From positions 3,224,001-3,288,000 of the forward strand of contig JANHCV010000001.1 in NCBI GenBank assembly GCA_025594325.1: a DNA stretch of 64,000 nucleotides, written 5' to 3'. The stretch is from Blastocladiella emersonii ATCC 22665. Taxonomy: Eukaryota; Fungi; Blastocladiomycota. Under the pieces are notes generated by a model, which was not told the DNA's origin, did no database searches, and saw only the letters and a program-made list of their open reading frames with translations. This document shows, one piece after another, positions 21,381 to 41,181 of this stretch; position 1 is the stretch's first letter, and each line of letters starts with the position of its first letter. A program made the translations under genes and the position numbers.

Positions 21381-24300
21381 GCAGAGCATTGCGATTCACC
21401 AGGGGGAAAACGAACTCGACACCCGATTTCGGTCGCGGGCTCGCGGCGGCGGCGGCCGGCGGCCGGCGACTGGTAAATACCCCGATCAGCCTTGGCCGGC
21501 GGCAAGGGACGCGGTCGCGGGCGGGCGGCGGGAGTCGTCCTCGCTCGTTCAAACTGACGAGTCAGGCAAAAAAAAATCCTTATCAACATTTCCTGTGATG
21601 GCGGCACACGTGGAGAGACGTCCCTGGCGCAGCCACGCCTGCGCCCACCCCGGTAGGGTTTGGATATGGCACGCAGGCGTAGGGGCGAGGTTTCGTCAAT
21701 CCAAAGCTAGCACCTAGGGACTACGCCGGCTCTGCCAACGTGCCTTGACCGTGGGAGAACCACCCAGCGCAATGCGGACGGGGCGCGCCGCGGCATGCGC
21801 GGATGCGAGGCGCCGGATGGGCGACTCGCGCGCGGCGCGTGGCGCGCGTGCGTCCACTGCACGTGGGTGGCGCAGCGCGTCTCCAGCCGTCCGTGCGCCC
21901 GGGTCCGGCAGCCGGCAATCTCCGTGATCCGTTGCCCACCAATTGGTGCAACTTTCATCACGAATCGTGCCAGCAGGGCGGCCGGGAACCGCCCGTGCTC
22001 GGCACCGGCGCACGCACACTCGGCATTCGAGTGAGAAATGATGATGCACCAAGCGTGGGTCCCGGGCGTCCAACTATTTATTTACTGCGGGGTGGAGGTG
22101 GGCATCGGTTCGCCCGTCCCTGCCCATGGGTGTGCGCGCGCGATCCACCCGTGGCGCGCGATGAAGAAGATTCCTCGGGGCCCACGCGGGCGGGCCCACG
22201 CGGCCCGCGCGCTCGGCTCGGGCCTCAGTCCGCCCCGTTCGATCGGAGCTCCCTGCCGAATCGCGAGCAAGGCAAGCTTTCGTGCCGCCGCACGCACGCG
22301 CGCGCCGCGCGTTTCCCCCAGATCGCGTCTTCCCCCGATCACGTCTCCCGTCGCGCCGCATACCCGAATCGCTCGTGCGCGCGCCGGCAGTAGAACATGG
22401 CATGGCGCACACGGCGCGACCCTGCCCATGGACCACGACCCTGCCCATGGACCACGACCCTGCCCATGGACCACGACCATGACCATGGCCATGGCCATGA
22501 TCATGCCAAACTGAACGAGTCCATCGCATCGCTCTACACACACTCGCTTCTATTTCTCTTCGTTACTCCTGCTCCTACTCTTCTACCCCCACTCTCCTAC
22601 GCGCGGCGCAAGTCGCCCGCCGACGCCTGCCGCTACGCCTTGTGCCACCGCTGCGCCAGATCGCGCATCGCCGCGGCGATCACGTTGCGCTCGCCCTCGG
22701 ACCACTCGCTGTGCTCGAGGACCGCGGACTCGACCATGTCCATGTCGACCATGCACAGCGCGACGAGGGTCCGGACGGCCGCGTCCGCCGTCCCCAGACA
22801 CTCGCTGCAGCTGCGCCGGGCGGGACCGTCGTGGACCTCGCCGACCTCGTCGTCCTTGTCGCTGCCGCCGCTGCCGTGAGCGTGAGCGTGAGCGTGAGCG
22901 TGAGCGCGAGCGTGCACGTCGTCGCCGGCCTCGTCGACCTTGCGCTGCTGCTGCTGCTGCTGGAGCTTGGACTGGAGCCACCCGCCCTCCCAGTGGCGGT
23001 CGATGAACCGCGCGATCGCGACCTTGCCGCGCTTGGGCAGGCGCTTGAGGTTGCCCATGGCCTCGCACACGGCCATGATCACCGCCCACATGCCCTCGAA
23101 CCAAACTTGGCCGTCCTGCAGGTCGCACGACGACGACGCGCACGCAGCCGCGCAGTCGCCCGGCGTGCGGCGGGTCGGCTTGGGCAGCTTGGCGCGCGTG
23201 TGACCCACGCCGTCGCCCGCGCCGTACTGCGCCTCGAGCATGGTCGCGAACACGACGAGCAGCAGCGGCGTGTCGTCCTCGAACACGGTCTCGGCGCCTG
23301 CGGCGCGGATCATGGTGAGGAAGCGCTCGCGCGCGTCCAGGTCCTGCCGCCCGTCGCGGCCGCGGCCGCTCGCGAGCACCCCGAACGCCCACGACGCCTG
23401 CGGGTCCGCCATGACGGACTCGATCGCCTTCTTGATCTCCTCGGGCGGCGCGGTGCGGCCGACGTTGACGCCGACGACGCCGAGGAGCGGCGACAGGACC
23501 ACGGCCATGATGTCGGCCGGGTTCGCCACGGGCTCCGGGACACTGAGCACAGCCACCACCGCCGCCGCCAGGTCCGCGTCAAAGACGAGGGCGCCGATCG
23601 ACGTCACCGTGGTGCTCCACAGCGCGCCGCCAGCGTCGCGCGTGAATGCGGCGTCGTTCCGCCGGACGCCGTCGCGCAGCGAGGCGAGCAGCTGCTGGCC
23701 CAGGAGCGGCAGAGACGCGCGGCGGTCGACGCCGTTGCTGGCCGCCATGCCCGCAACCTCGTTCTCGACGGCAGCTTGCCCGATGGCCACGGCAAAGGCT
23801 ACGGTTCGGGCGGGAGGCGTCGTGGCGTTAGTCGGGTGGTCGCCCCAAGGAGCACAGGAGGGAGGCGCGGGAAGATACGGACCACGGGCGAGGATGGCGT
23901 GCTTGAGCTCGGGCGAGGCCTCGCCGTTGACCTCAGCCCAGAAGCGCGGGGCTGCGTTGCGGAACAGGTCGAGGAAGAGGGCGAACGCGTTCTCGGGCTC
24001 GCGCTCGACCCATTCCTGCTTGGCCGACACGGCGTCGACCAGCGACCGCGTTGCGACGCGGAGGCACAGGTCGTAGACGCGGGCGAACGCGTGCGCGTTG
24101 GTGGCGGCGCCGGGGCCGCCGGCGGCGGCGGCGGCCCTGCACACGCGGACGTAGTCGTCGTACCCGTAGCCGAGGACGCGGGCCGTGCAGCGCACCACCT
24201 CTTTATCCGACGCGAGCGTGTCCTCGACGAACCGGATCTCGGCAGGGTCGAGCGGGGCGAGGAAGGTTGCCGCCACCGCGTGGCTCTCGGTCAGGATCTC

Positions 24301-25481
24301 GCACAGGATCCGCGGCGTTGGGCGTGCGACGTTGAGCGGGCCGCCGAGCAGCTGGAGCGCGCTGATCGGGCACGGGTGGAAGCTCGCGCCGCGTTCCCGG
24401 GCCCGGTTGGCGATCGCGGCCCGGGCCGCCTTGTACAGGGCGTGCGGCGGGATCGGGGCCACGAGGATGCGCCGCTGCCACCACGGGTTCGTCAGCACGA
24501 CGTGGAGGACGCGCTGGGTCGCCTCGTTGAGCGGCAGCGCAATGGCGTCGTTGGCGAGGGTGTTGGGCGGTGCGGCGAAGAGGTTGGTGACGGTGTTGGG
24601 CTGCACTGCGACGAGGTTGGCGAGGGCGTTGCAGACCCACAGCATCGGGTGCGGGTGTGGGGGAGCGAGGATGGCGGCGGGGAGGAGCGTGGGGAGGAGC
24701 GTGGGGAGGAGCGTGGGGAGGAGCGTGGGGAGGAGCGTGGGGAGGAGCGTGGCGAGGGCCTCGGCCGCCGCGTCGTTGGACGAGAGCACGGCGGTAATGG
24801 CGAGGGCCTCGGGGAGGAGCCAGACACCGCACAGGCGCATGTTGGCGATGGCGGGGACGTGGCGCGTGAGCTCGACCAAGAGGTCCGGGACGCGGTGGCC
24901 CTGGTCGGGGTACAGGACCGCGGCCGCGGCCGTGAGCATGGTCAGCGCCACGGCGGCGCGCGAGCGCGTGGTGAGGCCCTGGATCGCGCCCGTGAGCGCC
25001 GGCGATACTGCCGCGTCGCTGGCGGCGAAGATGCCCTTGCGGACGGCGTCGGGCAGGGCGGCGAGCGCGAGCACGTCGTCGATGGCGTGGCCGAAGACGG
25101 CCGTGGTGGCGGGGGACATGACGGCGGCCGCCGGGTTGTGCGGCAGCAGCGAGAGACGCGCGAGCTCGAAGCGGCCGATCGCTTCGTAGAGGACGCGGTG
25201 GTGGGCGAGGAGCGCGGGCGGGATGCGCGGGTGCGTGCAGCCCGCCTTGAGGAAGCGGAGCAGGATGCGCATGGCGGGGAGGGAGGCGAGTGGCGGGGGC
25301 GGGGGTGCCGTGGGCGCGGGGTTCGGGAGGCACGTTTCCGCGCCGGCCGCCGCGCGGGCGAGAGCGGCCTCGATGGCCGAGGTGCCGGCGACGAGCGCGC
25401 GGGCCATCCACGTGCTGTGCCGGGCCGCGGTGAGGTGGCGGAACAGGTGGCGCGACGCGGCGGGGACGGCCGGGCTCGCAC
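21381..25481. repeat. Palindrome 1, left arm (~4.1 kb)
   Basis: Reverse complement of 27096-31196; paired coordinates sum to 52577; all six-frame ORFs mirror identically; one mismatch seen (21390/31187). Confidence 0.97.
22417..22478 (+). repeat. 19-bp tandem repeat, 3 copies, in the non-coding part of the palindrome 1 arm (mirrored at ~30099-30160)
   Basis: cgaccctgcccatggacca three times, followed by catgac/catggc hexamers. Confidence 0.9.
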
Positions 25482-25960
25482 TTGGCGGCGTGGATGAAGC
25501 GCGGCGTGGACGAAGCGCGCGAGCCGCGTGTTGAGCGGGATTGCGGGGAATCCGGGCAGCGCGTTGAAGGTGATGGACGGGGGGGTCGCCCACGCCGGGG
25601 TCGACGTGGTGCGCGGGGTCGCGATCGGCGAAGGCCAGCTGTGGCCGTGGCCGTGGCCGTGGCCGTGTCTCCGGGGTGCGTCGTGCACCCGTCATGGCCG
25701 GTTTACTACAACGAGGCGTGCGCGCGTCGAGTCAGGGTCCGTTTTTGGCGACGAGCGGCGGCCCGCTCGCGCGCGCGAGGCGCGTACCACCACCAGCGCG
25801 TGCCCGCGTCAGCCGGGCGGATCGCGAGCAGGTCGAGCACGGCCGTCAGGTTGAGCGCCAGCGCCGACAGCTTGCGGGGCGACGTGAACGAGTCAACGAG
25901 GGCGAGGGCGGCGGGGACGAGGACAGCGGCGGCGGCCGCGCACGTCGAGCGCGCCGCCAT
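22633..25960 (-). CDS. Palindrome 1 left gene: ~1081-aa protein with a spliced hydrophobic N-terminus and the shared ~950-aa body
   Basis: Exon 1 25960-25788 (MAARSTCAAAAAVLVPAALALVD...TRWW). Intron 25787-25706 has a GTACGC donor, CTGAC branch and TAG acceptor and splices in frame into ORF 22633-25695. Body identical to the right copy from ASPAVPAASRH. Confidence 0.6.
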
Positions 25961-26980
25961 GGTGGCCGTTGCACACGCGCGGTGGTGGCCATGTCGCACG
26001 TCAGCAGGCGCACCTCGGCGTCTCGGCGGGGTGGGGCGTGTCTCGGCGGGGTGACGGTGCAGAGGCGGCCGTGTCTCAGCGCCGGGGTGGCGACGCCGCC
26101 GCCGCGCGACGGGCGGCCGCGGGCCAGCGGTGCGGATGGTGATGCATTGCGCCGAGTCGGGCGTGGCGAGATTGGTCTGGGCTGATGGGCGTTGTCGTCG
26201 TCGTCACCGTCGCCGTGCGTGCGTGCGGAGCGGCGGCGCGAGTGGGAAGCTCGTCTCGGCGCCACGCATGACAGGCTTGACGCGTTTTTCTCTGCCAAGC
26301 ACGTGGGCGTGAACAGCGCGCAGCACGCGCAGCACGCGCGTGACCCCCACCTGCCTCCCCTGCCTTCCCACCTGCCCACCCGCGGAAAGCGGCCCGAACC
26401 GAAAAATCCGTGTCCCCCGTCCGCCCGCGCCCGCCCGCTCGGAAATGGTCTCGCGGCGTCGCGCCGCGCCGCGTCACGCTGCGTCAGGGATGATGCGACC
26501 AGTGATTTCCGCTCCCGATGCGGCCCGCGCACTCGACTCGACGACGGCCGGCGGGCTGGCAGGCGGGTGCCTCCCACCACCGCGGCCGCCGCACGCCGCC
26601 GCGCCAGAGCGGGGATGTAATATTATAACGTTGCTCATGTCCGAACCAGCGGCATGGCCAGCACCGCCAGCAGCGAGCGGCGATGCGGCCGCCGCGCGCG
26701 CGTGTGTCTCGCACCACCACCACCGCCGCCGCCGCCGCCACCCGCGCAACAGCCAGCCGGCAGGCGCCCGTAATATTCGGGCCCTGATCACACTCGCTCG
26801 CACCACGCCGCGCGACGCGAACCTGGCTGCTCACTCCTCCCCCCTCGCTCTCGTCAACCTCCCCACTCTCCCTCCCCGTTGCAGTTGCACCGATCGCCCT
26901 CGACTCGTCCGCGTCTCAGACTAGTCATTGTCGACGCGCGCATCCGCTCCCGCCCACGTACGGCCCACGCGCCGCCGACC

Positions 26981-29944
26981 ATGCCGCACCACCACCACAC
27001 GCAGCAGCAGCCGCCGTCGCCACCGCACGGCGGCTTGTCCATGACCTTCAACGCGCTGCCCGACGAGATCCGCGAGCGCGTGCTCGACCTCGCCCGTGCG
27101 AGCCCGGCCGTCCCCGCCGCGTCGCGCCACCTGTTCCGCCACCTCACCGCGGCCCGGCACAGCACGTGGATGGCCCGCGCGCTCGTCGCCGGCACCTCGG
27201 CCATCGAGGCCGCTCTCGCCCGCGCGGCGGCCGGCGCGGAAACGTGCCTCCCGAACCCCGCGCCCACGGCACCCCCGCCCCCGCCACTCGCCTCCCTCCC
27301 CGCCATGCGCATCCTGCTCCGCTTCCTCAAGGCGGGCTGCACGCACCCGCGCATCCCGCCCGCGCTCCTCGCCCACCACCGCGTCCTCTACGAAGCGATC
27401 GGCCGCTTCGAGCTCGCGCGTCTCTCGCTGCTGCCGCACAACCCGGCGGCCGCCGTCATGTCCCCCGCCACCACGGCCGTCTTCGGCCACGCCATCGACG
27501 ACGTGCTCGCGCTCGCCGCCCTGCCCGACGCCGTCCGCAAGGGCATCTTCGCCGCCAGCGACGCGGCAGTATCGCCGGCGCTCACGGGCGCGATCCAGGG
27601 CCTCACCACGCGCTCGCGCGCCGCCGTGGCGCTGACCATGCTCACGGCCGCGGCCGCGGTCCTGTACCCCGACCAGGGCCACCGCGTCCCGGACCTCTTG
27701 GTCGAGCTCACGCGCCACGTCCCCGCCATCGCCAACATGCGCCTGTGCGGTGTCTGGCTCCTCCCCGAGGCCCTCGCCATTACCGCCGTGCTCTCGTCCA
27801 ACGACGCGGCGGCCGAGGCCCTCGCCACGCTCCTCCCCACGCTCCTCCCCACGCTCCTCCCCACGCTCCTCCCCACGCTCCTCCCCACGCTCCTCCCCGC
27901 CGCCATCCTCGCTCCCCCACACCCGCACCCGATGCTGTGGGTCTGCAACGCCCTCGCCAACCTCGTCGCAGTGCAGCCCAACACCGTCACCAACCTCTTC
28001 GCCGCACCGCCCAACACCCTCGCCAACGACGCCATTGCGCTGCCGCTCAACGAGGCGACCCAGCGCGTCCTCCACGTCGTGCTGACGAACCCGTGGTGGC
28101 AGCGGCGCATCCTCGTGGCCCCGATCCCGCCGCACGCCCTGTACAAGGCGGCCCGGGCCGCGATCGCCAACCGGGCCCGGGAACGCGGCGCGAGCTTCCA
28201 CCCGTGCCCGATCAGCGCGCTCCAGCTGCTCGGCGGCCCGCTCAACGTCGCACGCCCAACGCCGCGGATCCTGTGCGAGATCCTGACCGAGAGCCACGCG
28301 GTGGCGGCAACCTTCCTCGCCCCGCTCGACCCTGCCGAGATCCGGTTCGTCGAGGACACGCTCGCGTCGGATAAAGAGGTGGTGCGCTGCACGGCCCGCG
28401 TCCTCGGCTACGGGTACGACGACTACGTCCGCGTGTGCAGGGCCGCCGCCGCCGCCGGCGGCCCCGGCGCCGCCACCAACGCGCACGCGTTCGCCCGCGT
28501 CTACGACCTGTGCCTCCGCGTCGCAACGCGGTCGCTGGTCGACGCCGTGTCGGCCAAGCAGGAATGGGTCGAGCGCGAGCCCGAGAACGCGTTCGCCCTC
28601 TTCCTCGACCTGTTCCGCAACGCAGCCCCGCGCTTCTGGGCTGAGGTCAACGGCGAGGCCTCGCCCGAGCTCAAGCACGCCATCCTCGCCCGTGGTCCGT
28701 ATCTTCCCGCGCCTCCCTCCTGTGCTCCTTGGGGCGACCACCCGACTAACGCCACGACGCCTCCCGCCCGAACCGTAGCCTTTGCCGTGGCCATCGGGCA
28801 AGCTGCCGTCGAGAACGAGGTTGCGGGCATGGCGGCCAGCAACGGCGTCGACCGCCGCGCGTCTCTGCCGCTCCTGGGCCAGCAGCTGCTCGCCTCGCTG
28901 CGCGACGGCGTCCGGCGGAACGACGCCGCATTCACGCGCGACGCTGGCGGCGCGCTGTGGAGCACCACGGTGACGTCGATCGGCGCCCTCGTCTTTGACG
29001 CGGACCTGGCGGCGGCGGTGGTGGCTGTGCTCAGTGTCCCGGAGCCCGTGGCGAACCCGGCCGACATCATGGCCGTGGTCCTGTCGCCGCTCCTCGGCGT
29101 CGTCGGCGTCAACGTCGGCCGCACCGCGCCGCCCGAGGAGATCAAGAAGGCGATCGAGTCCGTCATGGCGGACCCGCAGGCGTCGTGGGCGTTCGGGGTG
29201 CTCGCGAGCGGCCGCGGCCGCGACGGGCGGCAGGACCTGGACGCGCGCGAGCGCTTCCTCACCATGATCCGCGCCGCAGGCGCCGAGACCGTGTTCGAGG
29301 ACGACACGCCGCTGCTGCTCGTCGTGTTCGCGACCATGCTCGAGGCGCAGTACGGCGCGGGCGACGGCGTGGGTCACACGCGCGCCAAGCTGCCCAAGCC
29401 GACCCGCCGCACGCCGGGCGACTGCGCGGCTGCGTGCGCGTCGTCGTCGTGCGACCTGCAGGACGGCCAAGTTTGGTTCGAGGGCATGTGGGCGGTGATC
29501 ATGGCCGTGTGCGAGGCCATGGGCAACCTCAAGCGCCTGCCCAAGCGCGGCAAGGTCGCGATCGCGCGGTTCATCGACCGCCACTGGGAGGGCGGGTGGC
29601 TCCAGTCCAAGCTCCAGCAGCAGCAGCAGCAGCGCAAGGTCGACGAGGCCGGCGACGACGTGCACGCTCGCGCTCACGCTCACGCTCACGCTCACGCTCA
29701 CGGCAGCGGCGGCAGCGACAAGGACGACGAGGTCGGCGAGGTCCACGACGGTCCCGCCCGGCGCAGCTGCAGCGAGTGTCTGGGGACGGCGGACGCGGCC
29801 GTCCGGACCCTCGTCGCGCTGTGCATGGTCGACATGGACATGGTCGAGTCCGCGGTCCTCGAGCACAGCGAGTGGTCCGAGGGCGAGCGCAACGTGATCG
29901 CCGCGGCGATGCGCGATCTGGCGCAGCGGTGGCACAAGGCGTAG
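26981..29944 (+). CDS. Palindrome 1 right gene: 987-aa protein with an N-terminal F-box-like motif
   Basis: MPHHHH...SMTFNALPDEIRERVLDLA resembles the F-box LPxEIxxxIL pattern; uninterrupted GC3-rich ORF; (LLPT)n, polyQ and (HA)n tracts; no other domain recognised. An upstream extension is possible. Confidence 0.7.
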   Translation: MPHHHHTQQQPPSPPHGGLSMTFNALPDEIRERVLDLARASPAVPAASRHLFRHLTAARHSTWMARALVAGTSAIEAALARAAAGAETCLPNPAPTAPPPPPLASLPAMRILLRFLKAGCTHPRIPPALLAHHRVLYEAIGRFELARLSLLPHNPAAAVMSPATTAVFGHAIDDVLALAALPDAVRKGIFAASDAAVSPALTGAIQGLTTRSRAAVALTMLTAAAAVLYPDQGHRVPDLLVELTRHVPAIANMRLCGVWLLPEALAITAVLSSNDAAAEALATLLPTLLPTLLPTLLPTLLPTLLPAAILAPPHPHPMLWVCNALANLVAVQPNTVTNLFAAPPNTLANDAIALPLNEATQRVLHVVLTNPWWQRRILVAPIPPHALYKAARAAIANRARERGASFHPCPISALQLLGGPLNVARPTPRILCEILTESHAVAATFLAPLDPAEIRFVEDTLASDKEVVRCTARVLGYGYDDYVRVCRAAAAAGGPGAATNAHAFARVYDLCLRVATRSLVDAVSAKQEWVEREPENAFALFLDLFRNAAPRFWAEVNGEASPELKHAILARGPYLPAPPSCAPWGDHPTNATTPPARTVAFAVAIGQAAVENEVAGMAASNGVDRRASLPLLGQQLLASLRDGVRRNDAAFTRDAGGALWSTTVTSIGALVFDADLAAAVVAVLSVPEPVANPADIMAVVLSPLLGVVGVNVGRTAPPEEIKKAIESVMADPQASWAFGVLASGRGRDGRQDLDARERFLTMIRAAGAETVFEDDTPLLLVVFATMLEAQYGAGDGVGHTRAKLPKPTRRTPGDCAAACASSSCDLQDGQVWFEGMWAVIMAVCEAMGNLKRLPKRGKVAIARFIDRHWEGGWLQSKLQQQQQQRKVDEAGDDVHARAHAHAHAHAHGSGGSDKDDEVGEVHDGPARRSCSECLGTADAAVRTLVALCMVDMDMVESAVLEHSEWSEGERNVIAAAMRDLAQRWHKA

Positions 29945-31196
29945 CGGCAGGCGTCGGCGGGCGACTTGCGCCGCGCGTAGGAGAGTGGGGGTAGAAGAGT
30001 AGGAGCAGGAGTAACGAAGAGAAATAGAAGCGAGTGTGTGTAGAGCGATGCGATGGACTCGTTCAGTTTGGCATGATCATGGCCATGGCCATGGTCATGG
30101 TCGTGGTCCATGGGCAGGGTCGTGGTCCATGGGCAGGGTCGTGGTCCATGGGCAGGGTCGCGCCGTGTGCGCCATGCCATGTTCTACTGCCGGCGCGCGC
30201 ACGAGCGATTCGGGTATGCGGCGCGACGGGAGACGTGATCGGGGGAAGACGCGATCTGGGGGAAACGCGCGGCGCGCGCGTGCGTGCGGCGGCACGAAAG
30301 CTTGCCTTGCTCGCGATTCGGCAGGGAGCTCCGATCGAACGGGGCGGACTGAGGCCCGAGCCGAGCGCGCGGGCCGCGTGGGCCCGCCCGCGTGGGCCCC
30401 GAGGAATCTTCTTCATCGCGCGCCACGGGTGGATCGCGCGCGCACACCCATGGGCAGGGACGGGCGAACCGATGCCCACCTCCACCCCGCAGTAAATAAA
30501 TAGTTGGACGCCCGGGACCCACGCTTGGTGCATCATCATTTCTCACTCGAATGCCGAGTGTGCGTGCGCCGGTGCCGAGCACGGGCGGTTCCCGGCCGCC
30601 CTGCTGGCACGATTCGTGATGAAAGTTGCACCAATTGGTGGGCAACGGATCACGGAGATTGCCGGCTGCCGGACCCGGGCGCACGGACGGCTGGAGACGC
30701 GCTGCGCCACCCACGTGCAGTGGACGCACGCGCGCCACGCGCCGCGCGCGAGTCGCCCATCCGGCGCCTCGCATCCGCGCATGCCGCGGCGCGCCCCGTC
30801 CGCATTGCGCTGGGTGGTTCTCCCACGGTCAAGGCACGTTGGCAGAGCCGGCGTAGTCCCTAGGTGCTAGCTTTGGATTGACGAAACCTCGCCCCTACGC
30901 CTGCGTGCCATATCCAAACCCTACCGGGGTGGGCGCAGGCGTGGCTGCGCCAGGGACGTCTCTCCACGTGTGCCGCCATCACAGGAAATGTTGATAAGGA
31001 TTTTTTTTTGCCTGACTCGTCAGTTTGAACGAGCGAGGACGACTCCCGCCGCCCGCCCGCGACCGCGTCCCTTGCCGCCGGCCAAGGCTGATCGGGGTAT
31101 TTACCAGTCGCCGGCCGCCGGCCGCCGCCGCCGCGAGCCCGCGACCGAAATCGGGTGTCGAGTTCGTTTTCCCCCTGGTGAATCGCCATGCTCTGC
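27096..31196. repeat. Palindrome 1, right arm (~4.1 kb)
   Basis: Reverse complement of 21381-25481; spacer 25482-27095 (1614 bp). Confidence 0.97.
27829..27897 (+). repeat. 12-bp coding tandem repeat encoding (LLPT)n (mirrored at ~24680-24748)
   Basis: cgctcctcccca repeated 5-6 times. Confidence 0.9.
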
Positions 31197-31955: not shown

Positions 31956-32195
31956 ACGCCTCGATGCGGCAGTCCTGCACAAACTCAAGCGCCGCGGCCG
32001 GGTCGACCTTGAACACCCACCCGAGGTACCTGAACACGATCGGGTTGTGCTCGGGCGACCCGTCGAGCTTGTACAGGTACGACAGCAGCGCGCGCGGGCC
32101 CGACAGCGAGCTCGTGGTGCCCTCCATCGCCTTGATGCAGTAGTGATCGAATCTCGCGTCAGTCAGTCAGTCACGGCCACGGAAAGCACACGCGC
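31956..32195 (-). pseudogene. Internal fragment copy of the VPS39-like gene (donor ~61275-61520)
   Basis: Encodes AMEGTTSSLSGPRALLSYLYKLDGSPEHNPIVFRYLGWVFKVDPAAALEFVQDCRIEAS with 4 substitutions against the donor; part of the diverged intron is kept but the AG acceptor is lost. Confidence 0.88.
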
Positions 32196-32210: not shown

Positions 32211-35200
32211 CAGCGTCTGGTCGGCCAACAACCCCGAGTAGTTTGCAGCCGTGAGCGGGTTTGGACAGGAAACCCGTCGTCGCGGTGAGCCGTTGGCTTA
32301 GTCGGGATGCTGGGTGGGGCACATCCCGCAAGAGCACACGGCCGCCGAAGACGAGCACCCTGAGCCTGCGCGGGTGGAAAGCGACGGGGCTCGCTCGCGC
32401 TGGTGCGCATGTTCTCGCGACCGCGCTCCGAGAGGCGGTTCAGTCGCGCCCCCGCGAACGCGTGCGGATCACGACACCGAGACTTGACTAAATCGCAAGG
32501 TATTTTCCGCAAGTCCGCGTGCCCATTTAAACGACTCTATGCTGACTCAAGGCTCCATTTGTCTCACGTCGCCCTGTTGGGTTGCGGCGGCCCGCGTCAC
32601 ACGCTGTGCTGCGTTACGGCGATGCCCTCAAGCAGAAGCAGCGGGCACTCTATACCACTCATTCTTCGTCAAGCCAACCGGATCAGACGTGTGGGTGTCG
32701 GACGCTATTGCGGCAAAGGCGTTCGAGGTTGTGGCGCTCAACTGCCCGCCAACCGTCTCCCAAAGGCGCGCGCTCGGCGCCGCGTGTGTAAGGCGTGGGT
32801 TGCTCTCGCACACCTCAAGGCGCGCTGGAGCAGCTGGCGCAGTCCTAGGATCCGACTGGTGTGTGACGCGCCCCTTTCCCCCGTCGAGCAGAACTAAGTT
32901 GTTCGGCGGAATGTGGAGGGGACGAGGGTACCGGCGCCCGCCCCTTTTGCTTCCGCATCGTTTGCTGCGCTCCACCTCTATAATTTTTCTTTTTGCTTGG
33001 TTATCGGGCGACTTTCAAGCGGCACCGATGGATCATCATCTCATCTCATCTCATCTCGCGCAAGCCAAGTTGAGAGGTCCCTCGAAACGCTCTGCGAACG
33101 GCGGGACGGTCCGCAAGCCGTCCCGCCCTTTGCTCGGCTGCCGGGTCACCACCACGTCCAGCGAACCATCACCGGACGCGTCAAGGGCGCGCGGTGATCG
33201 TTACGATCAACGCCTGCGAGCCGCAAGACGCGTCCGAAACTCGACGCGCGCGCGGCGAGGTCGGCGCGAGACAGTCGGTCACGTGCGCGGCGCGAGACAC
33301 TTGGTCAGGTGACGCGCGCGCCGACGCGCTCTCGCCCCTGCCCGTCGCGCTTTTCTTCGCCCCGCGCCTCCCGCTGCTTGCTACGGGTTGATATCGCCCA
33401 GCCGACTGCCACGTAAACTTCATGCACTTGAACGAGACCATGCTGCCGAAACTTTGTGTGCCAGCCATTGTCGAGAACATCCTCGTCCGCGCCGTCCACC
33501 TCCACCCCGACGAGCGGGACTACCAGGGCATGGCCGAGTACGCGCGCGTCATGCCCGAGTCCAGGATCCCGCGCGTCGTGCGCGCCATCTTTGCCCGCGT
33601 CCCTTACTTGAGTCCGGTCAAGGCAACCGCCCGCGGGCACGCCGCGGCGCTCCAGAAGCTGGCCGGGTTCCGCCGGTTTGGCTGCCCCATGGGTGGGCTC
33701 GAAAGGGCCGTCGAGGACGGGCACCTGTCGACCCTCGAGTTCTGGCGCGGCTCGCCTTCGCTCAAGCGCATCCTGCGCACGCAACGGGTCATCTCTTGGA
33801 GCCCGGCCGCTCGCGTCGCGCTTGGGATCGACCTGGACTGCTCGCGCGGCGCGGACGCCATGGTACGTTTGGCCGCCACCACCGCGCGCCTTTTTCATGC
33901 CCCGCGCCCTCCCACCCACCCATCCGCTCACGCTGTGTCCTCCGTTGCGACTAGATCCATCCGCCGGCCGACTACGACGTGGCAATCGACAGCATCTGCT
34001 CGGGCGTGGCGACGGGCGCCGTCACCGAGCTCATTCTCACGCACCGCGCCATCTCGCTCGCCGGGATCCACTCGCTCAACGAGGCTATGGCGAGCCCGAC
34101 GCAGGCGCTCACGTCCATTACGGTCGACGCCTGCACCATTGACCTGCCGCGCCTCCTTGCTTTCCGCTTCCCGCCATCAGTCACGGCCGTCTCGATCGCG
34201 AGCCCGTGGCTCAAGCCCGTGTTGGGCCAGCGCTACCCGACCACCGCCGCCACCGCGGCGGCGCCAGCAGCTGTACGGTGGCCCGCCAACCTGTCGTCGC
34301 TCTCGCTCTCGCTCATGAAGCTTTGGGACGCCACGGTCCCGTACCTCGTCCCGCACTTCCCGCCCACACTCTCAGCCCTTCATCTTTCGAACTGTCGCAT
34401 GCAGGATCCAGCTCTTGCCGCACTACTGCGCGCCATTCCGCACCTCGCGTCGCTCAGCCTGCGGGATGTCAGTTTGGACTACCCGCGCCTCGTCAAGGTG
34501 TTTGCGTGCTTGCCGCCGTCGCTCGTGTCGCTGGACATTTCGGGCGCCAAGCTGATTGTCCACGCCAAGGCCGCTTTGCCGATCTGGCAGTTCCCGCCCG
34601 ACCTCCTCGACCTCACGTTCACGGCTACCGCTTTCGAACGCCGTGGGTTGGATGCCCTCGCCACCTCTCTTCCAACCAAGCTTCGGACCTTGGAGATCAC
34701 TCGCTGCGATTTTGGGCCCCTGTCAACCGAGGCCGCCCTCACCACGTTAACGTCGGCTCTGCCGGCGTCGATCAAGTGCCTCGCGCTCGGCGGGTACGAC
34801 TTGAGCAAGCGCAGCACCCTGGTCCAAAGTCTCGCTGGTAAGCTCCCAGCAGAGCTCGAAAAGCTCGCACTTCCACGGTGCCGTGTCTCGCGAGACGCAT
34901 CCAGCGACCTGATTGCGAAACTGCCAGCTACGCTTCGCTACCTGGACCTTTCCACGGCCGAAATCACGAATCGCGGCGCGCGGCTGCTCAGTAACCGCCT
35001 TGGTTCGCAGCTCGGGACGCTCATCCTGGACCGCAGCACCGTTGACGCGGGAGCCGTCGCAAGGCTCACGGCCGACTTTCCGCACACGGTCCTTGATTGG
35101 AGAAATGATGCGGACGCCAACTGAGTGTGATCAATATTCAGGAATCTTGGCACCGAGCCCAGCGGCGCGTGCGTACCTCGCGAGCTTGTTTGGATCTACG

Positions 35201-35467
35201 TGTTTATGGTGGGGATACAGTGAATGTGAATTTATTTTCATGACAGAAAGCAAAACTATTGCTGGTCGTCGTTGTGGATCATCAAAGCCACGGAGCACTC
35301 GAAGTCAGGCGCACTGAGTGCCAGGCCGAACGAGTCCATGCCGCTGCTGCACACCGGGCACGCGGGGGCAACGAGGACGTGATTGAGCTTCGGCCGCAGC
35401 GACGCGTAGAGTGCGCGCCTGAAGCGCGGGTCGGTTCCGGGCACCGGCTCCGCGAGGGTACGCAATG
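32211..35467. repeat. Palindrome 2, left arm (~3.26 kb)
   Basis: Reverse complement of 37925-41181; paired coordinates sum to 73392; one mismatch seen (32251/41141). Confidence 0.97.
33422..35124 (+). CDS. RNI-like leucine-rich-repeat protein, 2 exons, ~536 aa (palindrome 2 left copy)
   Basis: Exon 1 33422-33862; intron 33863-33954 (GTACGT...CTAG) in frame; repeated LPxxLxxLxLxxC units (LSALHLSNCR, LVSLDISGAK, LRTLEITRC, LEKLALPRC, LRYLDLSTA). Confidence 0.75.
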
Positions 35468-35483
35468 CGTCGGCAGAGAGCGG

Positions 35484-35849
35484 CGTGATGGCTTCGCTAA
35501 GCTGGGCTCTCCCTTAACACCAACTGACATTTACTCCCATGAACCTACGTATAGACTCGCGTACCCGATCGTCGCGCGCGCCTTTGCGCGGATCGCGGCG
35601 CAGGTTCACCGCAGCAGCGTGGTCCGCGCGCTGGCGCAGCGCGAGCACGACGCGGCGTGTATCCGGCTCGCGGCGCTGCAGTGCGAGTCCGCGGTCGTCG
35701 AGGATCGCACGCTGTGCCCCGTGTGCGGCAAGCGGATCGGCAACAGCGCCATTGTCACGTCGGCGCGGTCGCCGGCCAGCGTCGTCCACTTTGCGTGCGC
35801 AACCACGGCGTCGGCTTCAGGTACGGCGGTGGGTCGCAGGAGGATGTGA
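35484..35849 (+). pseudogene. Copy of the last intron and 3' end of the VPS39-like gene with a 165-bp internal deletion (donor ~60253-60780, inverted)
   Basis: 35484-35554 is a diverged match to the donor intron; actcg is joined to cgtacccg; then LAYPIVARAF...CPVCGKRIGNS...GRRRM-stop, nearly identical to the donor. Confidence 0.88.
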
Positions 35850-36162
35850 GCGAGTGTTGGACATCAATCAAGCGTTTTTGACCCAACGCGTGGTGCGAGC
35901 GGTTGTGGAGCGGGTGACTTGGGCGCCCGTGAGTTTGCACTACGAGTAATTAACAACGCATGAAAGCTTAGCAGGCGCATCAGCTTACATGGCTTCTGCA
36001 ACCGTATATACTTGATGGGCAGGCGAGAACCAGGGTGAGACGTGTCATGATTTCACGTGAGTGGCGGAACGCGTGCGGCGCCGGTTCCCACGCGTCGCGT
36101 CGCGACATCCGCATCCTCTCCTCTCTGCCCCTACTGCCTCACTCTCACATGCAACCTAGACC

Positions 36163-38136
36163 ATGAATTTGCCCGCAACTGGTGGCAATAGATCTGCTAT
36201 TATGGACAACCGCGCGCCGGCGTATTTTCCGGCGCTCGTGACGTGCCGCACACAGTACCGCGGCAACCGCGTCAATCGGTTTCGCCCGTTCCGCAACCAA
36301 GCACCGCGCGACCTCTTCTTCTTCATGTCGCACGAATCGGCCACGCGCACCGAACTGCGCGCTCTCGTGTGCGGCTGTGGCGATCTGGCCGAGGTCGCCC
36401 GGACCGTGTGCGAGGCCGCAGCGTGGGGGAGCAAGCAAAACCTTTCATTCACTCTCAACGACTGGCAGCCCGAAGTCCTTGCGCGCAACATGCTCATTCT
36501 CCATGCGCTCGCGTTCTCGCCTGCTGACGAGGCCGACTTGCCGACTCTCACTCGCAACGTTGGCCAGCTGCGGTACTCGCACTTTCTCGATCCAGTCGTT
36601 CCTGAGTTTTGGAACGTCCAGATGCGCGCGCTTGCATCGCACCAAGGAGTGGGTGTGCGGTGCTCCCGCTGAGTCGCCCCTCAAGGTTACCGATGAATCG
36701 ACCCAGCGCGAGCTGCGCCGCTGCTGGCGCGCGTGGCTCGAGATCGATTGGACCGTCGACAAGGTGCTCGAGGAGCGCGCTCGGTACCACCACCTCTCAG
36801 TTTCTTCCGCCGATCCACCATCCAGCCCGAATGTCTCGAGCTCGGTGTCTCCTTTCACGGACCAACTGAACGCGCAGTACCGAGGTGTGCTCACGGGCGC
36901 CCAATGAGCGCGGACCGCGTGCTCCATCGAGCGCCTTGCCGAGTCGAACGCCTTCACGCAGGATTCGGCCCCTATTGTCAAACCAACGTACCTCGCCCTG
37001 GCCATCGACAACGAGCCGTACTACGCTGTCGACTCAGACTGCATGCCAACCAACGCTTTCAATCTGCTTCTTGGCCGCGGGCTTCCCGAGTCGGCGATGT
37101 TGGGCGTGCTCGGCGACTGGATCACTGTGCTATACGCTGGCTTGACGGGAAGTCATGTACGCGTCGTCGTTGTCAGTTGTGGCCACGCAATCACAGACAT
37201 GGGGCGAATCATCGCCGATCCGACAGCGTACTTTGACGTCTTGGACGCCAACAACCTTGCGGATTCCTGCGGGTTGGTCAGCGTGCTTGTCCACGGATCG
37301 CCGCTGCTCCGCTCTACCGACACCGACACCGACACGCACTCGGAGCCCGCGCGCCTGCTGACTTAATCAAAGGCAATGGCGGCTGGGGACGATTCGTATA
37401 ATGACCTTGACGCGCACCTGCAGCACGTGGCGGGCCTTCCGCACGCGGCCCTCCCGGCCTTCTTTGGTGTCCCCCTTGCCGAATGGTCGATCCCCAACCG
37501 CTCGCCGACGTGGTATCAAGGTGCCGCTTGGGCTCTAGATCACCTCAATGCCAGCCCAACGCCCTACCTTACGTTCGTAAGGCAGGCTCCGCCGACCGTG
37601 CCGACGTATTTGGACCAATCGCGGTTTTTCATCGACGCGCAGGTCGCTTGCGTCCGCCAGTTCTCCACGTCGAAGGTGAACGGTGCGCTTCTGCTGGTAT
37701 ACTCCTCAGCGTGAGCATGAGCGCCGTTAACATTTGGTTTGCACTGAGGCGAGCGACTGCTGCGCTCTCATCTTCATCGATCGCGGTGTCCTGCTTCCCT
37801 CGGCCGGCCCGGGCATGATCCCGACGCCTGGCCGCGAGTGCAAATCTCGAATCGCAGGCGATTGCGGGTCGGATGGCTGTCCGCGAGCTCCCGGCCGGCT
37901 CCAACACCCCGCTTTCTGCCGCCACATTGCGTACCCTCGCGGAGCCGGTGCCCGGAACCGACCCGCGCTTCAGGCGCGCACTCTACGCGTCGCTGCGGCC
38001 GAAGCTCAATCACGTCCTCGTTGCCCCCGCGTGCCCGGTGTGCAGCAGCGGCATGGACTCGTTCGGCCTGGCACTCAGTGCGCCTGACTTCGAGTGCTCC
38101 GTGGCTTTGATGATCCACAACGACGACCAGCAATAG
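36163..38136 (+). pseudogene. DUF4470-like gene, apparently full length but frameshifted
   Basis: LVCGCGDLAEV, FTLNDWQPEVLARNMLIL, WLEIDWTVDKVLEER, FDVLDANNLADSCGL, consistent with the DUF4470 GCGD / NDxxPxxLARN / FDxIDxxNLxD motifs. Two 2-bp insertions near 36625-36642 relative to the 59-kb copy, plus further stops and shifts; the 3' end runs into the palindrome 2 right arm. Confidence 0.7.
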
Positions 38137-41100
38137 TTTTGCTTTCTGTCATGAAAATAAATTCACATTCACTGTATCCCCACCATAAACACGTAGATCC
38201 AAACAAGCTCGCGAGGTACGCACGCGCCGCTGGGCTCGGTGCCAAGATTCCTGAATATTGATCACACTCAGTTGGCGTCCGCATCATTTCTCCAATCAAG
38301 GACCGTGTGCGGAAAGTCGGCCGTGAGCCTTGCGACGGCTCCCGCGTCAACGGTGCTGCGGTCCAGGATGAGCGTCCCGAGCTGCGAACCAAGGCGGTTA
38401 CTGAGCAGCCGCGCGCCGCGATTCGTGATTTCGGCCGTGGAAAGGTCCAGGTAGCGAAGCGTAGCTGGCAGTTTCGCAATCAGGTCGCTGGATGCGTCTC
38501 GCGAGACACGGCACCGTGGAAGTGCGAGCTTTTCGAGCTCTGCTGGGAGCTTACCAGCGAGACTTTGGACCAGGGTGCTGCGCTTGCTCAAGTCGTACCC
38601 GCCGAGCGCGAGGCACTTGATCGACGCCGGCAGAGCCGACGTTAACGTGGTGAGGGCGGCCTCGGTTGACAGGGGCCCAAAATCGCAGCGAGTGATCTCC
38701 AAGGTCCGAAGCTTGGTTGGAAGAGAGGTGGCGAGGGCATCCAACCCACGGCGTTCGAAAGCGGTAGCCGTGAACGTGAGGTCGAGGAGGTCGGGCGGGA
38801 ACTGCCAGATCGGCAAAGCGGCCTTGGCGTGGACAATCAGCTTGGCGCCCGAAATGTCCAGCGACACGAGCGACGGCGGCAAGCACGCAAACACCTTGAC
38901 GAGGCGCGGGTAGTCCAAACTGACATCCCGCAGGCTGAGCGACGCGAGGTGCGGAATGGCGCGCAGTAGTGCGGCAAGAGCTGGATCCTGCATGCGACAG
39001 TTCGAAAGATGAAGGGCTGAGAGTGTGGGCGGGAAGTGCGGGACGAGGTACGGGACCGTGGCGTCCCAAAGCTTCATGAGCGAGAGCGAGAGCGACGACA
39101 GGTTGGCGGGCCACCGTACAGCTGCTGGCGCCGCCGCGGTGGCGGCGGTGGTCGGGTAGCGCTGGCCCAACACGGGCTTGAGCCACGGGCTCGCGATCGA
39201 GACGGCCGTGACTGATGGCGGGAAGCGGAAAGCAAGGAGGCGCGGCAGGTCAATGGTGCAGGCGTCGACCGTAATGGACGTGAGCGCCTGCGTCGGGCTC
39301 GCCATAGCCTCGTTGAGCGAGTGGATCCCGGCGAGCGAGATGGCGCGGTGCGTGAGAATGAGCTCGGTGACGGCGCCCGTCGCCACGCCCGAGCAGATGC
39401 TGTCGATTGCCACGTCGTAGTCGGCCGGCGGATGGATCTAGTCGCAACGGAGGACACAGCGTGAGCGGATGGGTGGGTGGGAGGGCGCGGGGCATGAAAA
39501 AGGCGCGCGGTGGTGGCGGCCAAACGTACCATGGCGTCCGCGCCGCGCGAGCAGTCCAGGTCGATCCCAAGCGCGACGCGAGCGGCCGGGCTCCAAGAGA
39601 TGACCCGTTGCGTGCGCAGGATGCGCTTGAGCGAAGGCGAGCCGCGCCAGAACTCGAGGGTCGACAGGTGCCCGTCCTCGACGGCCCTTTCGAGCCCACC
39701 CATGGGGCAGCCAAACCGGCGGAACCCGGCCAGCTTCTGGAGCGCCGCGGCGTGCCCGCGGGCGGTTGCCTTGACCGGACTCAAGTAAGGGACGCGGGCA
39801 AAGATGGCGCGCACGACGCGCGGGATCCTGGACTCGGGCATGACGCGCGCGTACTCGGCCATGCCCTGGTAGTCCCGCTCGTCGGGGTGGAGGTGGACGG
39901 CGCGGACGAGGATGTTCTCGACAATGGCTGGCACACAAAGTTTCGGCAGCATGGTCTCGTTCAAGTGCATGAAGTTTACGTGGCAGTCGGCTGGGCGATA
40001 TCAACCCGTAGCAAGCAGCGGGAGGCGCGGGGCGAAGAAAAGCGCGACGGGCAGGGGCGAGAGCGCGTCGGCGCGCGCGTCACCTGACCAAGTGTCTCGC
40101 GCCGCGCACGTGACCGACTGTCTCGCGCCGACCTCGCCGCGCGCGCGTCGAGTTTCGGACGCGTCTTGCGGCTCGCAGGCGTTGATCGTAACGATCACCG
40201 CGCGCCCTTGACGCGTCCGGTGATGGTTCGCTGGACGTGGTGGTGACCCGGCAGCCGAGCAAAGGGCGGGACGGCTTGCGGACCGTCCCGCCGTTCGCAG
40301 AGCGTTTCGAGGGACCTCTCAACTTGGCTTGCGCGAGATGAGATGAGATGAGATGATGATCCATCGGTGCCGCTTGAAAGTCGCCCGATAACCAAGCAAA
40401 AAGAAAAATTATAGAGGTGGAGCGCAGCAAACGATGCGGAAGCAAAAGGGGCGGGCGCCGGTACCCTCGTCCCCTCCACATTCCGCCGAACAACTTAGTT
40501 CTGCTCGACGGGGGAAAGGGGCGCGTCACACACCAGTCGGATCCTAGGACTGCGCCAGCTGCTCCAGCGCGCCTTGAGGTGTGCGAGAGCAACCCACGCC
40601 TTACACACGCGGCGCCGAGCGCGCGCCTTTGGGAGACGGTTGGCGGGCAGTTGAGCGCCACAACCTCGAACGCCTTTGCCGCAATAGCGTCCGACACCCA
40701 CACGTCTGATCCGGTTGGCTTGACGAAGAATGAGTGGTATAGAGTGCCCGCTGCTTCTGCTTGAGGGCATCGCCGTAACGCAGCACAGCGTGTGACGCGG
40801 GCCGCCGCAACCCAACAGGGCGACGTGAGACAAATGGAGCCTTGAGTCAGCATAGAGTCGTTTAAATGGGCACGCGGACTTGCGGAAAATACCTTGCGAT
40901 TTAGTCAAGTCTCGGTGTCGTGATCCGCACGCGTTCGCGGGGGCGCGACTGAACCGCCTCTCGGAGCGCGGTCGCGAGAACATGCGCACCAGCGCGAGCG
41001 AGCCCCGTCGCTTTCCACCCGCGCAGGCTCAGGGTGCTCGTCTTCGGCGGCCGTGTGCTCTTGCGGGATGTGCCCCACCCAGCATCCCGACTAAGCCAAC

Positions 41101-41181
41101 GGCTCACCGCGACGACGGGTTTCCTGTCCAAACCCGCTCATGGCTGCAAACTACTCGGGGTTGTTGGCCGACCAGACGCTG
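37925..41181. repeat. Palindrome 2, right arm (~3.26 kb)
   Basis: Reverse complement of 32211-35467; spacer 35468-37924 (2457 bp). Confidence 0.97.
38268..39970 (-). CDS. RNI-like LRR protein (palindrome 2 right copy)
   Basis: Mirror of 33422-35124; translations identical. Confidence 0.75.

What the first reader, a model, noticed from the sequence alone, without database searches (positions are those of the whole stretch)
21381..41181. 20-kb domain of two gene-bearing palindromes plus a patchwork of neighbouring-gene fragments: a candidate local gene-conversion and rearrangement system
Seen: almost all of this interval is copied from elsewhere in the window. The order is IR1-left, spacer, IR1-right, SH3 fragment, VPS39 fragment, IR2-left, VPS39 3' end, DUF4470, IR2-right, with pieces abutting within 0-15 bp. 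The donors are the SH3, LRR, DUF4470 and VPS39 genes at 50-64 kb. Every duplicated pair has a tract of ~100% identity ending abruptly beside a tract of older divergence (inner edges of both palindromes, 31197-31315, 35484-35554, 36330-36750). Where coding, many of the older differences are synonymous, e.g. ctc/ctt, aat/aac, cgc/cgt, gtg/gta in the SH3 copy. Established: palindrome arms can be kept identical by arm-to-arm gene conversion, and microhomology template switching (MMBIR/FoSTeS) produces local patchworks. Inference: an old functional duplicate, or a hybrid/polyploid homeolog, of the 50-64 kb cluster was scrambled and is still being homogenised, preserving lineage-specific F-box-like and LRR genes. 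No transposase, recombinase or target-site duplication explains it.
Basis: partly seen in the sequence, partly recalled or inferred. Interest (0 to 1): 0.82.

Follow-up and report, generated by a model that had tools for sequence, protein, structure and literature searches.

The report
Two adjacent gene-bearing palindromes, Blastocladiella
A 20-kb stretch of the water fungus Blastocladiella emersonii really holds two neighbouring mirror-image duplications with letter-identical arms plus scraps of nearby genes; it is a recombination-scrambled copy of a recurrent gene module, a familiar kind of structure and one of many in this genome, not a special system.

Summary
The structure exists as described and is not an assembly error. 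IR1 has 4,101-nt arms, one mismatch and a 1,614-nt spacer. IR2 has 3,281-nt arms, six mismatches all within 41 nt of an edge, and a 2,409-nt spacer. A 1-kb linker holds an SH3-gene 5' fragment and a VPS39 fragment. The IR2 spacer holds a 1.2-kb VPS39-3'/DUF4470-5' patch. Contigs from HiFi, Illumina and 454 runs break exactly at the repeat edges, carry most junctions, and show about double depth on the identical tracts.

- IR1 has no counterpart at 50-64 kb; it carries an orphan ~950-aa gene.
- The closest relative of the IR2 LRR gene lies about 116 kb away (locus L002, 91% nt).
- The DUF4470 copy at 59 kb is itself truncated.

L002 preserves an LRR->DUF4470->X->MBOAT order. It shows that the IR2 arms are composite, joined at a 38-nt inverted repeat. 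It also shows that both arms carry their own derived changes at the inner edge, so IR2 is an older palindrome that was recently re-homogenised.

Best reading: ordinary homologous and replicative repair among dispersed paralogous modules, not a dedicated system. The scan has already confirmed many palindromes elsewhere in this genome. This is a new member of a known kind.

The parts
21381..25481 (.). IR1 left arm (4,101 nt)
   Evidence: reverse complement of 27096-31196, with a single mismatch at 21390
25482..27095 (.). IR1 spacer (1,614 nt). It holds the two different 5' ends of the divergent arm genes.
   Evidence: Its only internal similarity is a 26-nt island, 25553-25578 vs 27037-27062, displaced by 38 nt.
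27096..31196 (.). IR1 right arm
   Evidence: The X1 contig runs 30200-31186 at depth 198 and ends one base before the mismatch.
26981..29944 (+). Orphan gene, right copy (annotated product 944 aa). Its N-terminus, with an LPDEI-type motif, is encoded in the spacer.
   Evidence: GC3 is 0.92. No Pfam family. No homolog found. Weak F-box/ARM leads.
22633..25960 (-). Orphan gene, left copy (annotated product 961 aa). The body is identical; the N-terminus differs and lacks the motif in frame.
31196..31960 (-). Copy of the SH3 gene's upstream region and first ~600 nt of coding sequence (source 51337-52085). 31316-31955 is identical; 31196-31315 is about 87% with frame-breaking indels.
   Evidence: A 640-nt contig covers exactly 31316-31955 in X1 and X2.
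31955..32191 (-). VPS39 internal fragment (source 61274-61514). The exon part is 97.8% identical, the intron part about 70%. The junction with the SH3 piece lies in 4-5 nt of microhomology.
   Evidence: The window-specific letters at 31987, 32010 and 32030 are present in X1 and X2 contigs; X3 shows the first two.
32211..35491 (.). IR2 left arm (3,281 nt) = X' + LRR gene + inverted DUF4470 3' tail
   Evidence: Contigs start at 32211 and end at 35467.
33292..33329 (.). 38-nt core at the X'|LRR junction inside the arm (mirror copy at 40063-40100). It equals the short inverted repeat that flanks the LRR->DUF4470 module in L002.
33440..35124 (+). LRR gene, left copy (two exons; same protein as P0001, 530 aa)
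35492..37900 (.). IR2 spacer (2,409 nt)
35556..36751 (+). Inverted copy of 60546-59355 (VPS39 3' end with zinc finger, intergenic region, DUF4470 5' part). 35556-36347 is a recent patch with 1 difference.
   Evidence: An X3 contig covering 35438-36199 bridges the junctions.
36163..38082 (+). DUF4470 paralog B. It is collinear with the L002 DUF4470 gene beyond 36751. Two 2-nt insertions near 36624-36640 break the frame. Its 3' tail runs into IR2-R.
37901..41181 (.). IR2 right arm
   Evidence: Junctions 37900|37901 and 41181|41182 are seen as loose ends in 454 and Illumina contigs.
38268..39952 (-). LRR gene, right copy (P0001)
59355..60546 (-). Source of the spacer patch: true VPS39 3' end plus a truncated DUF4470 copy C (homology to A and B stops at 59355)
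51337..52085 (-). SH3 gene 5' part and upstream region, partner of 31196-31960
18817..20672 (+). MBOAT gene, 98.5% identical to the MBOAT gene that follows the module in L002

Best explanation
The domain is a real product of repeated DNA-repair copying among dispersed paralogous segments on one B. emersonii chromosome (contig JANHCV010000001.1, about 3.245-3.265 Mb).

IR2 derives from a copy of a recurrent module, LRR gene -> DUF4470 gene -> segment X. That order is preserved 116 kb away in L002, where a 38-50-nt inverted repeat flanks the module. Recombination or a fold-back template switch at that short repeat joined X in inverted orientation to the LRR gene and founded a palindrome. Its arms later diverged. 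One arm was then copied over the other (arm-to-arm gene conversion or break-induced re-copying), leaving 3.2 kb identical and only the last 24-40 nt at each end different.

A separate repair event invaded the truncated DUF4470 copy next to VPS39 through DUF4470 homology. It copied 0.8 kb outward into the VPS39 3' end, giving the identical patch in the spacer.

The linker pieces (SH3 5' end, VPS39 exon) are templated insertions joined with 0-5 nt of microhomology.

IR1 is an independent inverted duplication of an orphan gene, either very young or just homogenised. Its breakpoint cuts the gene's 5' end.

Shown: the structure, its presence in reads, the paralog relations, and the derived states in both IR2 arms. 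Inferred: the order of events and the repair pathways.
For: Structure and mismatch positions.

Mismatches cluster at the arm edges. IR1's single mismatch lies 9 nt from an edge (about 0.5% chance if uniform). All six IR2 mismatches lie within 41 nt of an edge.

Reads:
- Contigs of the 2022 run X1 (probably the HiFi run) and of X2 (read here as the Illumina run) break at 31186, 31316/31955, 32211, 35467 and 35556.
- X1 depth is 198-234 on all two-copy tracts. The two versions of the VPS39 fragment have 90 and 127, which sum to 217.
- X2 depth on IR2 is about 62, against an expected single-copy word depth of about 30.
- Junctions 21380|21381, 31196|31197, 35491|35492, 35555|35556, 37900|37901 and 41181|41182 appear in Illumina or 454 contigs.

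Assembly: HiFi reads of mean 10.5 kb at about 186x, assembled with LJA (PMC9730499).

Outgroup locus L002: module order, with 91%, 89%, 82% and 98.5% identities to the window. Short inverted repeat in L002 and its coincidence with the arm-internal junction. Two derived states in the left arm and three in the right within the 24-nt inner edge.

DUF4470: copy C stops at 59355, whereas copy B continues collinear with L002.

Microhomology at the SH3|VPS39 junction. Synonymous bias in the SH3 tract.
Against: - The two-tier evidence for IR2 rests on only 24 nt. The next 64 nt are only marginally similar to L002 (14 of 500 shuffles reach the score).
- For IR1 nothing separates a very recent duplication from conversion.
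- IR1's inner junctions (25481, 27096), the linker's internal junction at 31955-31960 and its junction with IR2 at 32210|32211 were not seen to be bridged in independent reads.
- X1's apparent single-copy depth (about 90-127) is well below the 186x stated in the paper, so the twofold ratio rests on a few short contigs.
- The window-specific VPS39 version is consistently shallower than the gene's version (0.54-0.79), which could mean that not every nucleus or haplotype carries the domain.
- The diverged tracts in the SH3 and VPS39 linker fragments have no outgroup.
- All runs come from one strain.
Confidence: 0.6

Rival explanations
1. One recent catastrophic replication-based event (MMBIR / chromoanasynthesis-like serial template switching) built both palindromes, the linker and the spacer patch at once. 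On this view the diverged tracts were copied from other, unsampled paralogs rather than being old.
For: - All pieces abut closely, with 0-5 nt of microhomology or short fillers.
- Identical tracts have 0-1 differences.
- The templates lie within 30 kb.
- The DUF4470 and LRR families are large in this genome, so other templates may exist.
Against: - Both IR2 arms carry their own derived states relative to L002. A single copying event predicts changes in the new copy only.
- The SH3 diverged tract shows purifying-selection-like third-position bias.
- No third SH3 or VPS39 copy was found in the window, L001 or L002.
Confidence: 0.22
2. Assembly artefact: chimeric or fold-back long reads, a haplotype misjoin, or polishing that falsely homogenised the arms.
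For: - The assembly was purged of haplotigs and Pilon-polished with 65-nt reads.
- X1 depth on the arms (about 200-230) is close to the paper's mean coverage (about 186x).
- All data come from one strain.
Against: - Both palindromes have unique 1.6-2.4-kb spacers and sit inside a 5.1-Mb contig.
- Six junctions are present in Illumina or 454 contigs from separate libraries.
- Contigs branch exactly at the repeat edges.
- Identical tracts have the summed depth of the two distinguishable versions.
- HiFi reads of 10.5 kb mean length can span either palindrome.
Confidence: 0.05
3. A functional, maintained device: invertible (flip-flop) spacers or a dedicated conversion system that diversifies or protects LRR, DUF4470 and orphan genes.
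For: - Inverted repeats allow spacer inversion.
- The DUF4470 gene in the IR2 spacer ends inside an arm, so it would be completed in either orientation.
- LRR+DUF4470 modules recur in fast-turnover islands according to unchecked scan notes.
Against: - No recombinase or transposase family was found in the ORFs scanned.
- The DUF4470 copy in the spacer is frame-broken.
- The left IR1 gene copy has lost its N-terminal motif.
- No RNA run was listed.
- No evidence was obtained for both spacer orientations.
Confidence: 0.05
4. The LRR->DUF4470 module is a mobile element bounded by 38-50-nt terminal inverted repeats, and the palindrome arose from aberrant transposition.
For: A 50-nt inverted repeat (88% complementary) flanks the module in L002, and the module recurs.
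Against: - No target-site duplication is visible at the L002 repeat ends.
- No transposase was found.
- The repeat contains an E-box-like motif that is also tandemly repeated, so it looks more like shared promoter sequence.
Confidence: 0.06

Closest known systems
Gene-conversion-maintained palindromes of mammalian Y and X chromosomes and willow sex chromosomes (PMC8600007, PMC8327919, PMC7023750; titles and abstracts seen)
   Same: Gene-bearing inverted repeats around a unique spacer, with arm identity above 99.8%. Differences are confined to the arm ends. There is evidence that the palindrome is older than the identity of its arms suggests.
   Different: The arms are 3-4 kb rather than 10 kb to 1.5 Mb. 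The host is a fungus with no known sex chromosome. The arm genes are an orphan and an LRR gene, not testis-expressed families. No orthologous palindrome in a second species was available to prove age.
Inverted duplications and triplications seeded at short inverted repeats (ODIRA and fold-back priming in yeast; PMC4689423, PMC10766186, PMC11724301; seen)
   Same: A novel inversion junction (X'|LRR) lies exactly on a pre-existing 38-nt inverted repeat that flanks the module in the paralogous locus.
   Different: The structure is a duplication with a composite arm, not an inverted triplication. The arm extends beyond the short repeat on both sides, so further events are needed.
MMBIR/FoSTeS complex rearrangements with templated insertions (recalled from established knowledge; not read here)
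   Same: Short fragments from loci 20-30 kb away are inserted between larger duplications, with 0-5 nt of microhomology.
   Different: The inserted fragments are mosaics of identical and 8-30% diverged sequence, which one event does not explain.
Other palindromes already reported by this scan in the same genome (for example s1-269494 two-tier palindrome, s1-248135, s1-076256)
   Same: Letter-identical arms, unique spacers, diverged margins, same organism.
   Different: Here two palindromes sit 1 kb apart, with gene-fragment patchwork between and inside them. A paralogous module 116 kb away also resolves how one arm was put together.

Membership tests
Gene-conversion-maintained palindrome | Large inverted repeat with a unique spacer and arm identity above 99% | tested here: met
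   IR1 has 4,100 of 4,101 positions identical and IR2 has 3,275 of 3,281. The spacers are 1,614 and 2,409 nt.
Gene-conversion-maintained palindrome | The palindrome is older than arm identity implies (diverged margins or an orthologous palindrome) | tested here: inconclusive
   IR2: the 24-nt inner edge has 5 differences, 2 derived in the left arm and 3 in the right arm relative to L002, but the sample is tiny. IR1: only a displaced 26-nt island. No second species was available.
Gene-conversion-maintained palindrome | Observed conversion events or polymorphism between individuals | not testable with these tools
   All four runs come from one sample.
Short-inverted-repeat-seeded inverted duplication (ODIRA / fold-back) | An inversion junction at a pre-existing short inverted repeat | tested here: met
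   The L002 repeat 10495-10544 / 14861-14910 coincides with the window junction 33292-33329.
Short-inverted-repeat-seeded inverted duplication (ODIRA / fold-back) | Inverted triplication (direct-inverted-direct) product | tested here: not met
   There are only two copies of each arm in the window, and arm depth is about twice, not three times, that of the single-version fragments.
MMBIR/FoSTeS complex rearrangement | Microhomology at breakpoints and templated insertions from nearby loci | tested here: inconclusive
   The SH3|VPS39 junction has 4-5 nt of microhomology. The IR1|SH3 junction has 0-1 nt. Fillers of 19 and 64 nt are present. The templates lie 20-30 kb away.
Site-specific invertible segment / transposon | A recombinase or transposase gene, defined termini, and a target-site duplication | tested here: not met
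   No such Pfam family was found in the 29 long ORFs scanned. No target-site duplication is visible at the arm ends or at the L002 repeat. The scan of ORFs was not exhaustive.
F-box protein (IR1 gene) | A match to an F-box profile | tested here: not met
   No Pfam family at E<=1. There is only an LPDEI-type motif and weak language-model leads of 0.64-0.75.

The most novel reading that the evidence does not exclude
B. emersonii, for which I recall no described sexual cycle (from memory, not checked here), may hold gene-bearing palindromes genome-wide and re-homogenise them by intrachromosomal conversion. That would be an autosomal, fungal counterpart of the Y-chromosome strategy. This locus would show the process acting on a fast-evolving LRR+DUF4470 module family, possibly with a sensor or immunity-like role. 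Short promoter-like inverted repeats flanking the modules would be the seeds.
Probability: 0.15. Interest if true: 0.65.

Novelty: new member of a known kind. Interest (0 to 1): 0.4.

Why it matters
The locus shows, with an internal outgroup, how a small palindrome in a fungus was assembled at a short inverted repeat and later copy-corrected. It adds a well-resolved case to what appears to be an unusually palindrome-rich genome, a feature the genome paper does not mention. In practice it flags several GenBank gene models here as chimeras of unrelated gene fragments. It also warns that the LRR and DUF4470 paralogs exchange sequence, which will confound phylogenies of those families.

Tried and rejected
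- IR1 protein. The word-indexed search and the exhaustive HMMER search of 1.84 billion representatives gave no hit, not even to the annotated product. The blank may partly reflect composition filters. The exact-product lookup failed because the annotated model has an intron.
- RNA. No RNA run was listed for the IR1 gene, so expression is untested.
- Depth baseline. I considered that arm depth near the paper's 186x means single copy. I set this aside because the two distinguishable VPS39 versions sum to the depth of the identical tracts, and because Illumina depth on IR2 is about twice the expected word depth. The doubt is stated in the report.
- Loose ends. Several X1 and X2 loose ends match nothing in the window. 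They look like short GC-rich partial matches or 454 errors, not further copies.
- 64-nt filler. Its reading as a decayed DUF4470 tail is only marginal.
- Mobile element. No target-site duplication and no transposase.
- Error-prone synthesis at junctions as the source of the edge mismatches. Rejected for IR2 because both arms carry derived states.
- No tRNA genes are present.
Full report
**What is there**

A self-comparison of the window and a position-by-position check confirm two near-perfect inverted repeats.
- IR1: arms 21381-25481 and 27096-31196 (4,101 nt). The single mismatch is at 21390, 9 nt from the outer edge. The spacer is 1,614 nt.
- IR2: arms 32211-35491 and 37901-41181 (3,281 nt). 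The mismatches are at 32251 and at five positions in 35468-35488. The spacer is 2,409 nt.

Between the two palindromes lies a 1,014-nt linker.
- 31196-31960 is a direct copy of 51337-52085.
- 31955-32191 is a direct copy of 61274-61514.

Inside the IR2 spacer, 35556-36751 is an inverted copy of 60546-59355.

Pfam identifies the partner genes:
- an SH3-domain gene at 50549-51934 (-)
- an LRR gene at about 54.2-56.3 kb (-)
- a DUF4470 ORF at 59316-59939 (-)
- VPS39 at 60256-62919 (-)

- SH3 piece: 640 identical nt beside 120 nt at about 87% with two indels.
- VPS39 piece: 180 nt at 97.8% beside about 57 nt at about 70%. The diverged part coincides with a probable VPS39 intron.
- Spacer patch: 792 nt with one difference beside 404 nt at 92.6%.

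**Organism and assembly**

A protein search returned annotated proteins of Blastocladiella emersonii ATCC 22665. Their loci place the window on contig JANHCV010000001.1, where window coordinate = record coordinate - 3,224,000.

The genome paper (PMC9730499) describes HiFi reads of mean length 10.5 kb at about 186x. Assembly used LJA, purge_dups and Pilon polishing with 65-nt Illumina reads. The words 'palindrom' and 'inverted' do not occur in that paper.

**Real or artefact**

Logan contigs of four runs from the one sample were laid on 30200-36199. X1 is the 2022 run and is probably the HiFi run. I take X2 to be the Illumina run. X3 and X4 carry loxP linker sequence and homopolymer errors, so they look like 454 paired-end libraries.

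Contigs break exactly where the repeats end:
- at 31186, one base before the arm mismatch
- a 640-nt contig covering exactly 31316-31955
- a start at 32211
- an end at 35467
- a start at 35556

Loose ends were matched back to the window.
- The continuation after 31196 is the reverse complement of 21351-21380.
- The sequence before 32211 is the reverse complement of 41182-41211.
- The continuation after 35491 is the reverse complement of 37871-37900.
- The remaining matched loose ends are the donor loci.

X3 contigs bridge 31196|31197 (contig 31157-31526) and 35491 through 35556 (contig 35438-36199).

Depth in X1 is 198-234 on every two-copy tract. At the sites that distinguish the two VPS39 versions, the depths are 90 (window fragment) and 127 (gene), which sum to 217. 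In X2 the IR2 arms have depth about 62. The word depth expected from 64x coverage with 65-nt reads is about 30. IR1 is under-represented in X2, as expected for 72-74% GC.

The structure is therefore supported by three technologies, and a fold-back artefact would not have unique spacers.

Caveats:
- No listed contig was seen to bridge the 31955-31960 junction or 32210|32211.
- The X1 single-copy baseline rests on short contigs and is lower than the paper's 186x.
- The window-specific VPS39 version is consistently shallower than the gene's version (0.70, 0.79 and 0.54 in X1-X3).

**Genes**

IR1 carries a roughly 1,000-codon ORF with GC3 of 0.92. The two copies are transcribed divergently from the spacer. 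The annotated products are 961 aa (left) and 944 aa (right).

The arm boundary lies inside the 5' coding region. The right copy has an N-terminus with an LPDEI-type motif. The left copy has a different N-terminus, and only a 26-nt vestige of the motif region, 38 nt out of register and out of frame.

The protein has no Pfam family at E<=1 and no homolog in either large search. A language-model search gives only weak leads to F-box/ARM families.

IR2 carries convergent copies of a two-exon LRR gene (P0001, 530 aa).

The GenBank models P0002 (650 aa, named 'Vacuolar morphogenesis protein 6') and a 246-aa model across the linker are chimeras of unrelated fragments.

**The key outgroup**

The closest relative of the IR2 LRR gene is not in the window. 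P0003 lies about 116 kb away in inverted chromosomal orientation (locus L002).

L002 keeps a simple order: LRR -> DUF4470 (405 aa) -> segment X -> MBOAT. Window sequences match it as follows:

| L002 element | Window match | Identity |
|---|---|---|
| LRR | 33355-34610 | 91% |
| DUF4470 | 36360-37093, beyond the 36751 limit of homology with the 59-kb copy | 89% |
| DUF4470 3' tail | both inner arm ends (35310-35491 inverted; 37901-38082) | 77% in the relaxed alignments that span these ranges; 86-87% |
| Segment X | both outer arm parts (32701-33335 inverted; 40057-40691) | about 81-82% |
| MBOAT | 18817-20672 | 98.5% |

Two conclusions follow.
- The DUF4470 gene in the IR2 spacer is the full paralog, although two 2-nt insertions now break its frame.
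- The DUF4470 copy at 59.3-59.9 kb is a truncated fragment. Its homology to both others stops at 59355.

The identical 792-nt patch therefore runs from shared DUF4470 homology outward into the VPS39 3' end. That is what repair synthesis primed in the paralogous copy would leave.

**How the IR2 arm was built**

In L002 a 50-nt inverted repeat (88% complementary, 38-nt core) flanks the LRR->DUF4470 module. In the window the junction between inverted X and the LRR gene, inside each arm, lies exactly on that core.

The arm is therefore a recombinant, formed at a short inverted repeat. This is the known route to inverted duplications (PMC4689423, PMC10766186).

**Age of IR2**

A three-way alignment of the inner arm ends with L002 covers the five arm-to-arm differences in the last 24 nt. 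Two are derived in the left arm and three in the right arm. Both arms therefore changed independently, yet the adjoining 3,216 nt are identical, including tandem arrays with equal copy number.

This fits an older palindrome in which one arm was recently copied over the other. It argues against a single error-prone copying event. The evidence is small: the next 64 nt are only marginally similar to L002.

The clustering of all mismatches at the arm ends in both palindromes is itself highly non-random.

**Selection signal in the diverged tracts**

In the SH3 diverged tract, 10 of 14 substitutions are at third codon positions, with 9 synonymous (P=0.004).

In the DUF4470 tract the bias is weak: 12 of 24 at position 3, with 9 synonymous and 15 non-synonymous. 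A three-way count shows 27 changes private to the spacer copy, about 25 private to L002, and only 2 private to the 59-kb fragment. I cannot explain this asymmetry.

**Verdict**

- Copy-correction and template-switch repair are the best explanation.
- The region is not a scrambled twin of the 50-64 kb cluster.
- Nothing suggests a dedicated system.

Unchecked notes of this scan report many other confirmed palindromes in this genome and a large, fast-turnover LRR+DUF4470 family. This locus is therefore one more member of a known kind, with an unusually informative internal outgroup.

Noticed in passing
window 15160-17118: A 1.96-kb unit bounded by 215-nt inverted repeats with one mismatch.
   Followed up: no
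window 18817-20672 and L002:15513-17275: A whole MBOAT gene is duplicated at 98.5% identity between loci about 108 kb apart. That is far more similar than the neighbouring LRR, DUF4470 and X pieces (82-91%), which suggests a separate recent conversion or duplication.
   Followed up: partly
window 36348-36751 / 59355-59754 / L002:13307-13717: In a three-way comparison of DUF4470 copies, the truncated 59-kb fragment has only 2 private substitutions, against about 25-27 in each full copy, and the private sites are interleaved. The two full genes evolve fast or exchange sequence with other family members. This is unexplained.
   Followed up: partly
window 33440-36672, 31213-32127; L002:10001-12405: Three GenBank gene models look wrong. 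P0002, named 'Vacuolar morphogenesis protein 6', fuses LRR, the VPS39 zinc finger and DUF4470. A 246-aa model spans the SH3 and VPS39 fragments. P0003 is an LRR protein named 'Transporter of the ATP-binding cassette'.
   Followed up: partly
window 31987, 32010, 32030: The window-specific version of the VPS39 fragment is shallower than the true gene's version in three runs (ratios 0.70, 0.79 and 0.54). The domain might not be present in every nucleus or haplotype.
   Followed up: no
window 33262-33321 (mirror 40071-40130); L002:14870-14921: A 26-nt tandem repeat containing an E-box-like CACGTG motif overlaps the short inverted repeat that flanks the module. It may be shared promoter sequence rather than a transposon end.
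   Followed up: no
window 26981-29944: An orphan ~950-aa protein with TLLP x6 and His-Ala repeats, strong codon bias, and no homolog found in a search of 1.84 billion representative proteins.
   Followed up: partly
window 53634-53997, 56715-56840; L002:17572-18253: Further 76-85% fragments are shared between L002 and the window's 53-57 kb block. The 53-60 kb region is thus a third, rearranged relative of the same module.
   Followed up: no
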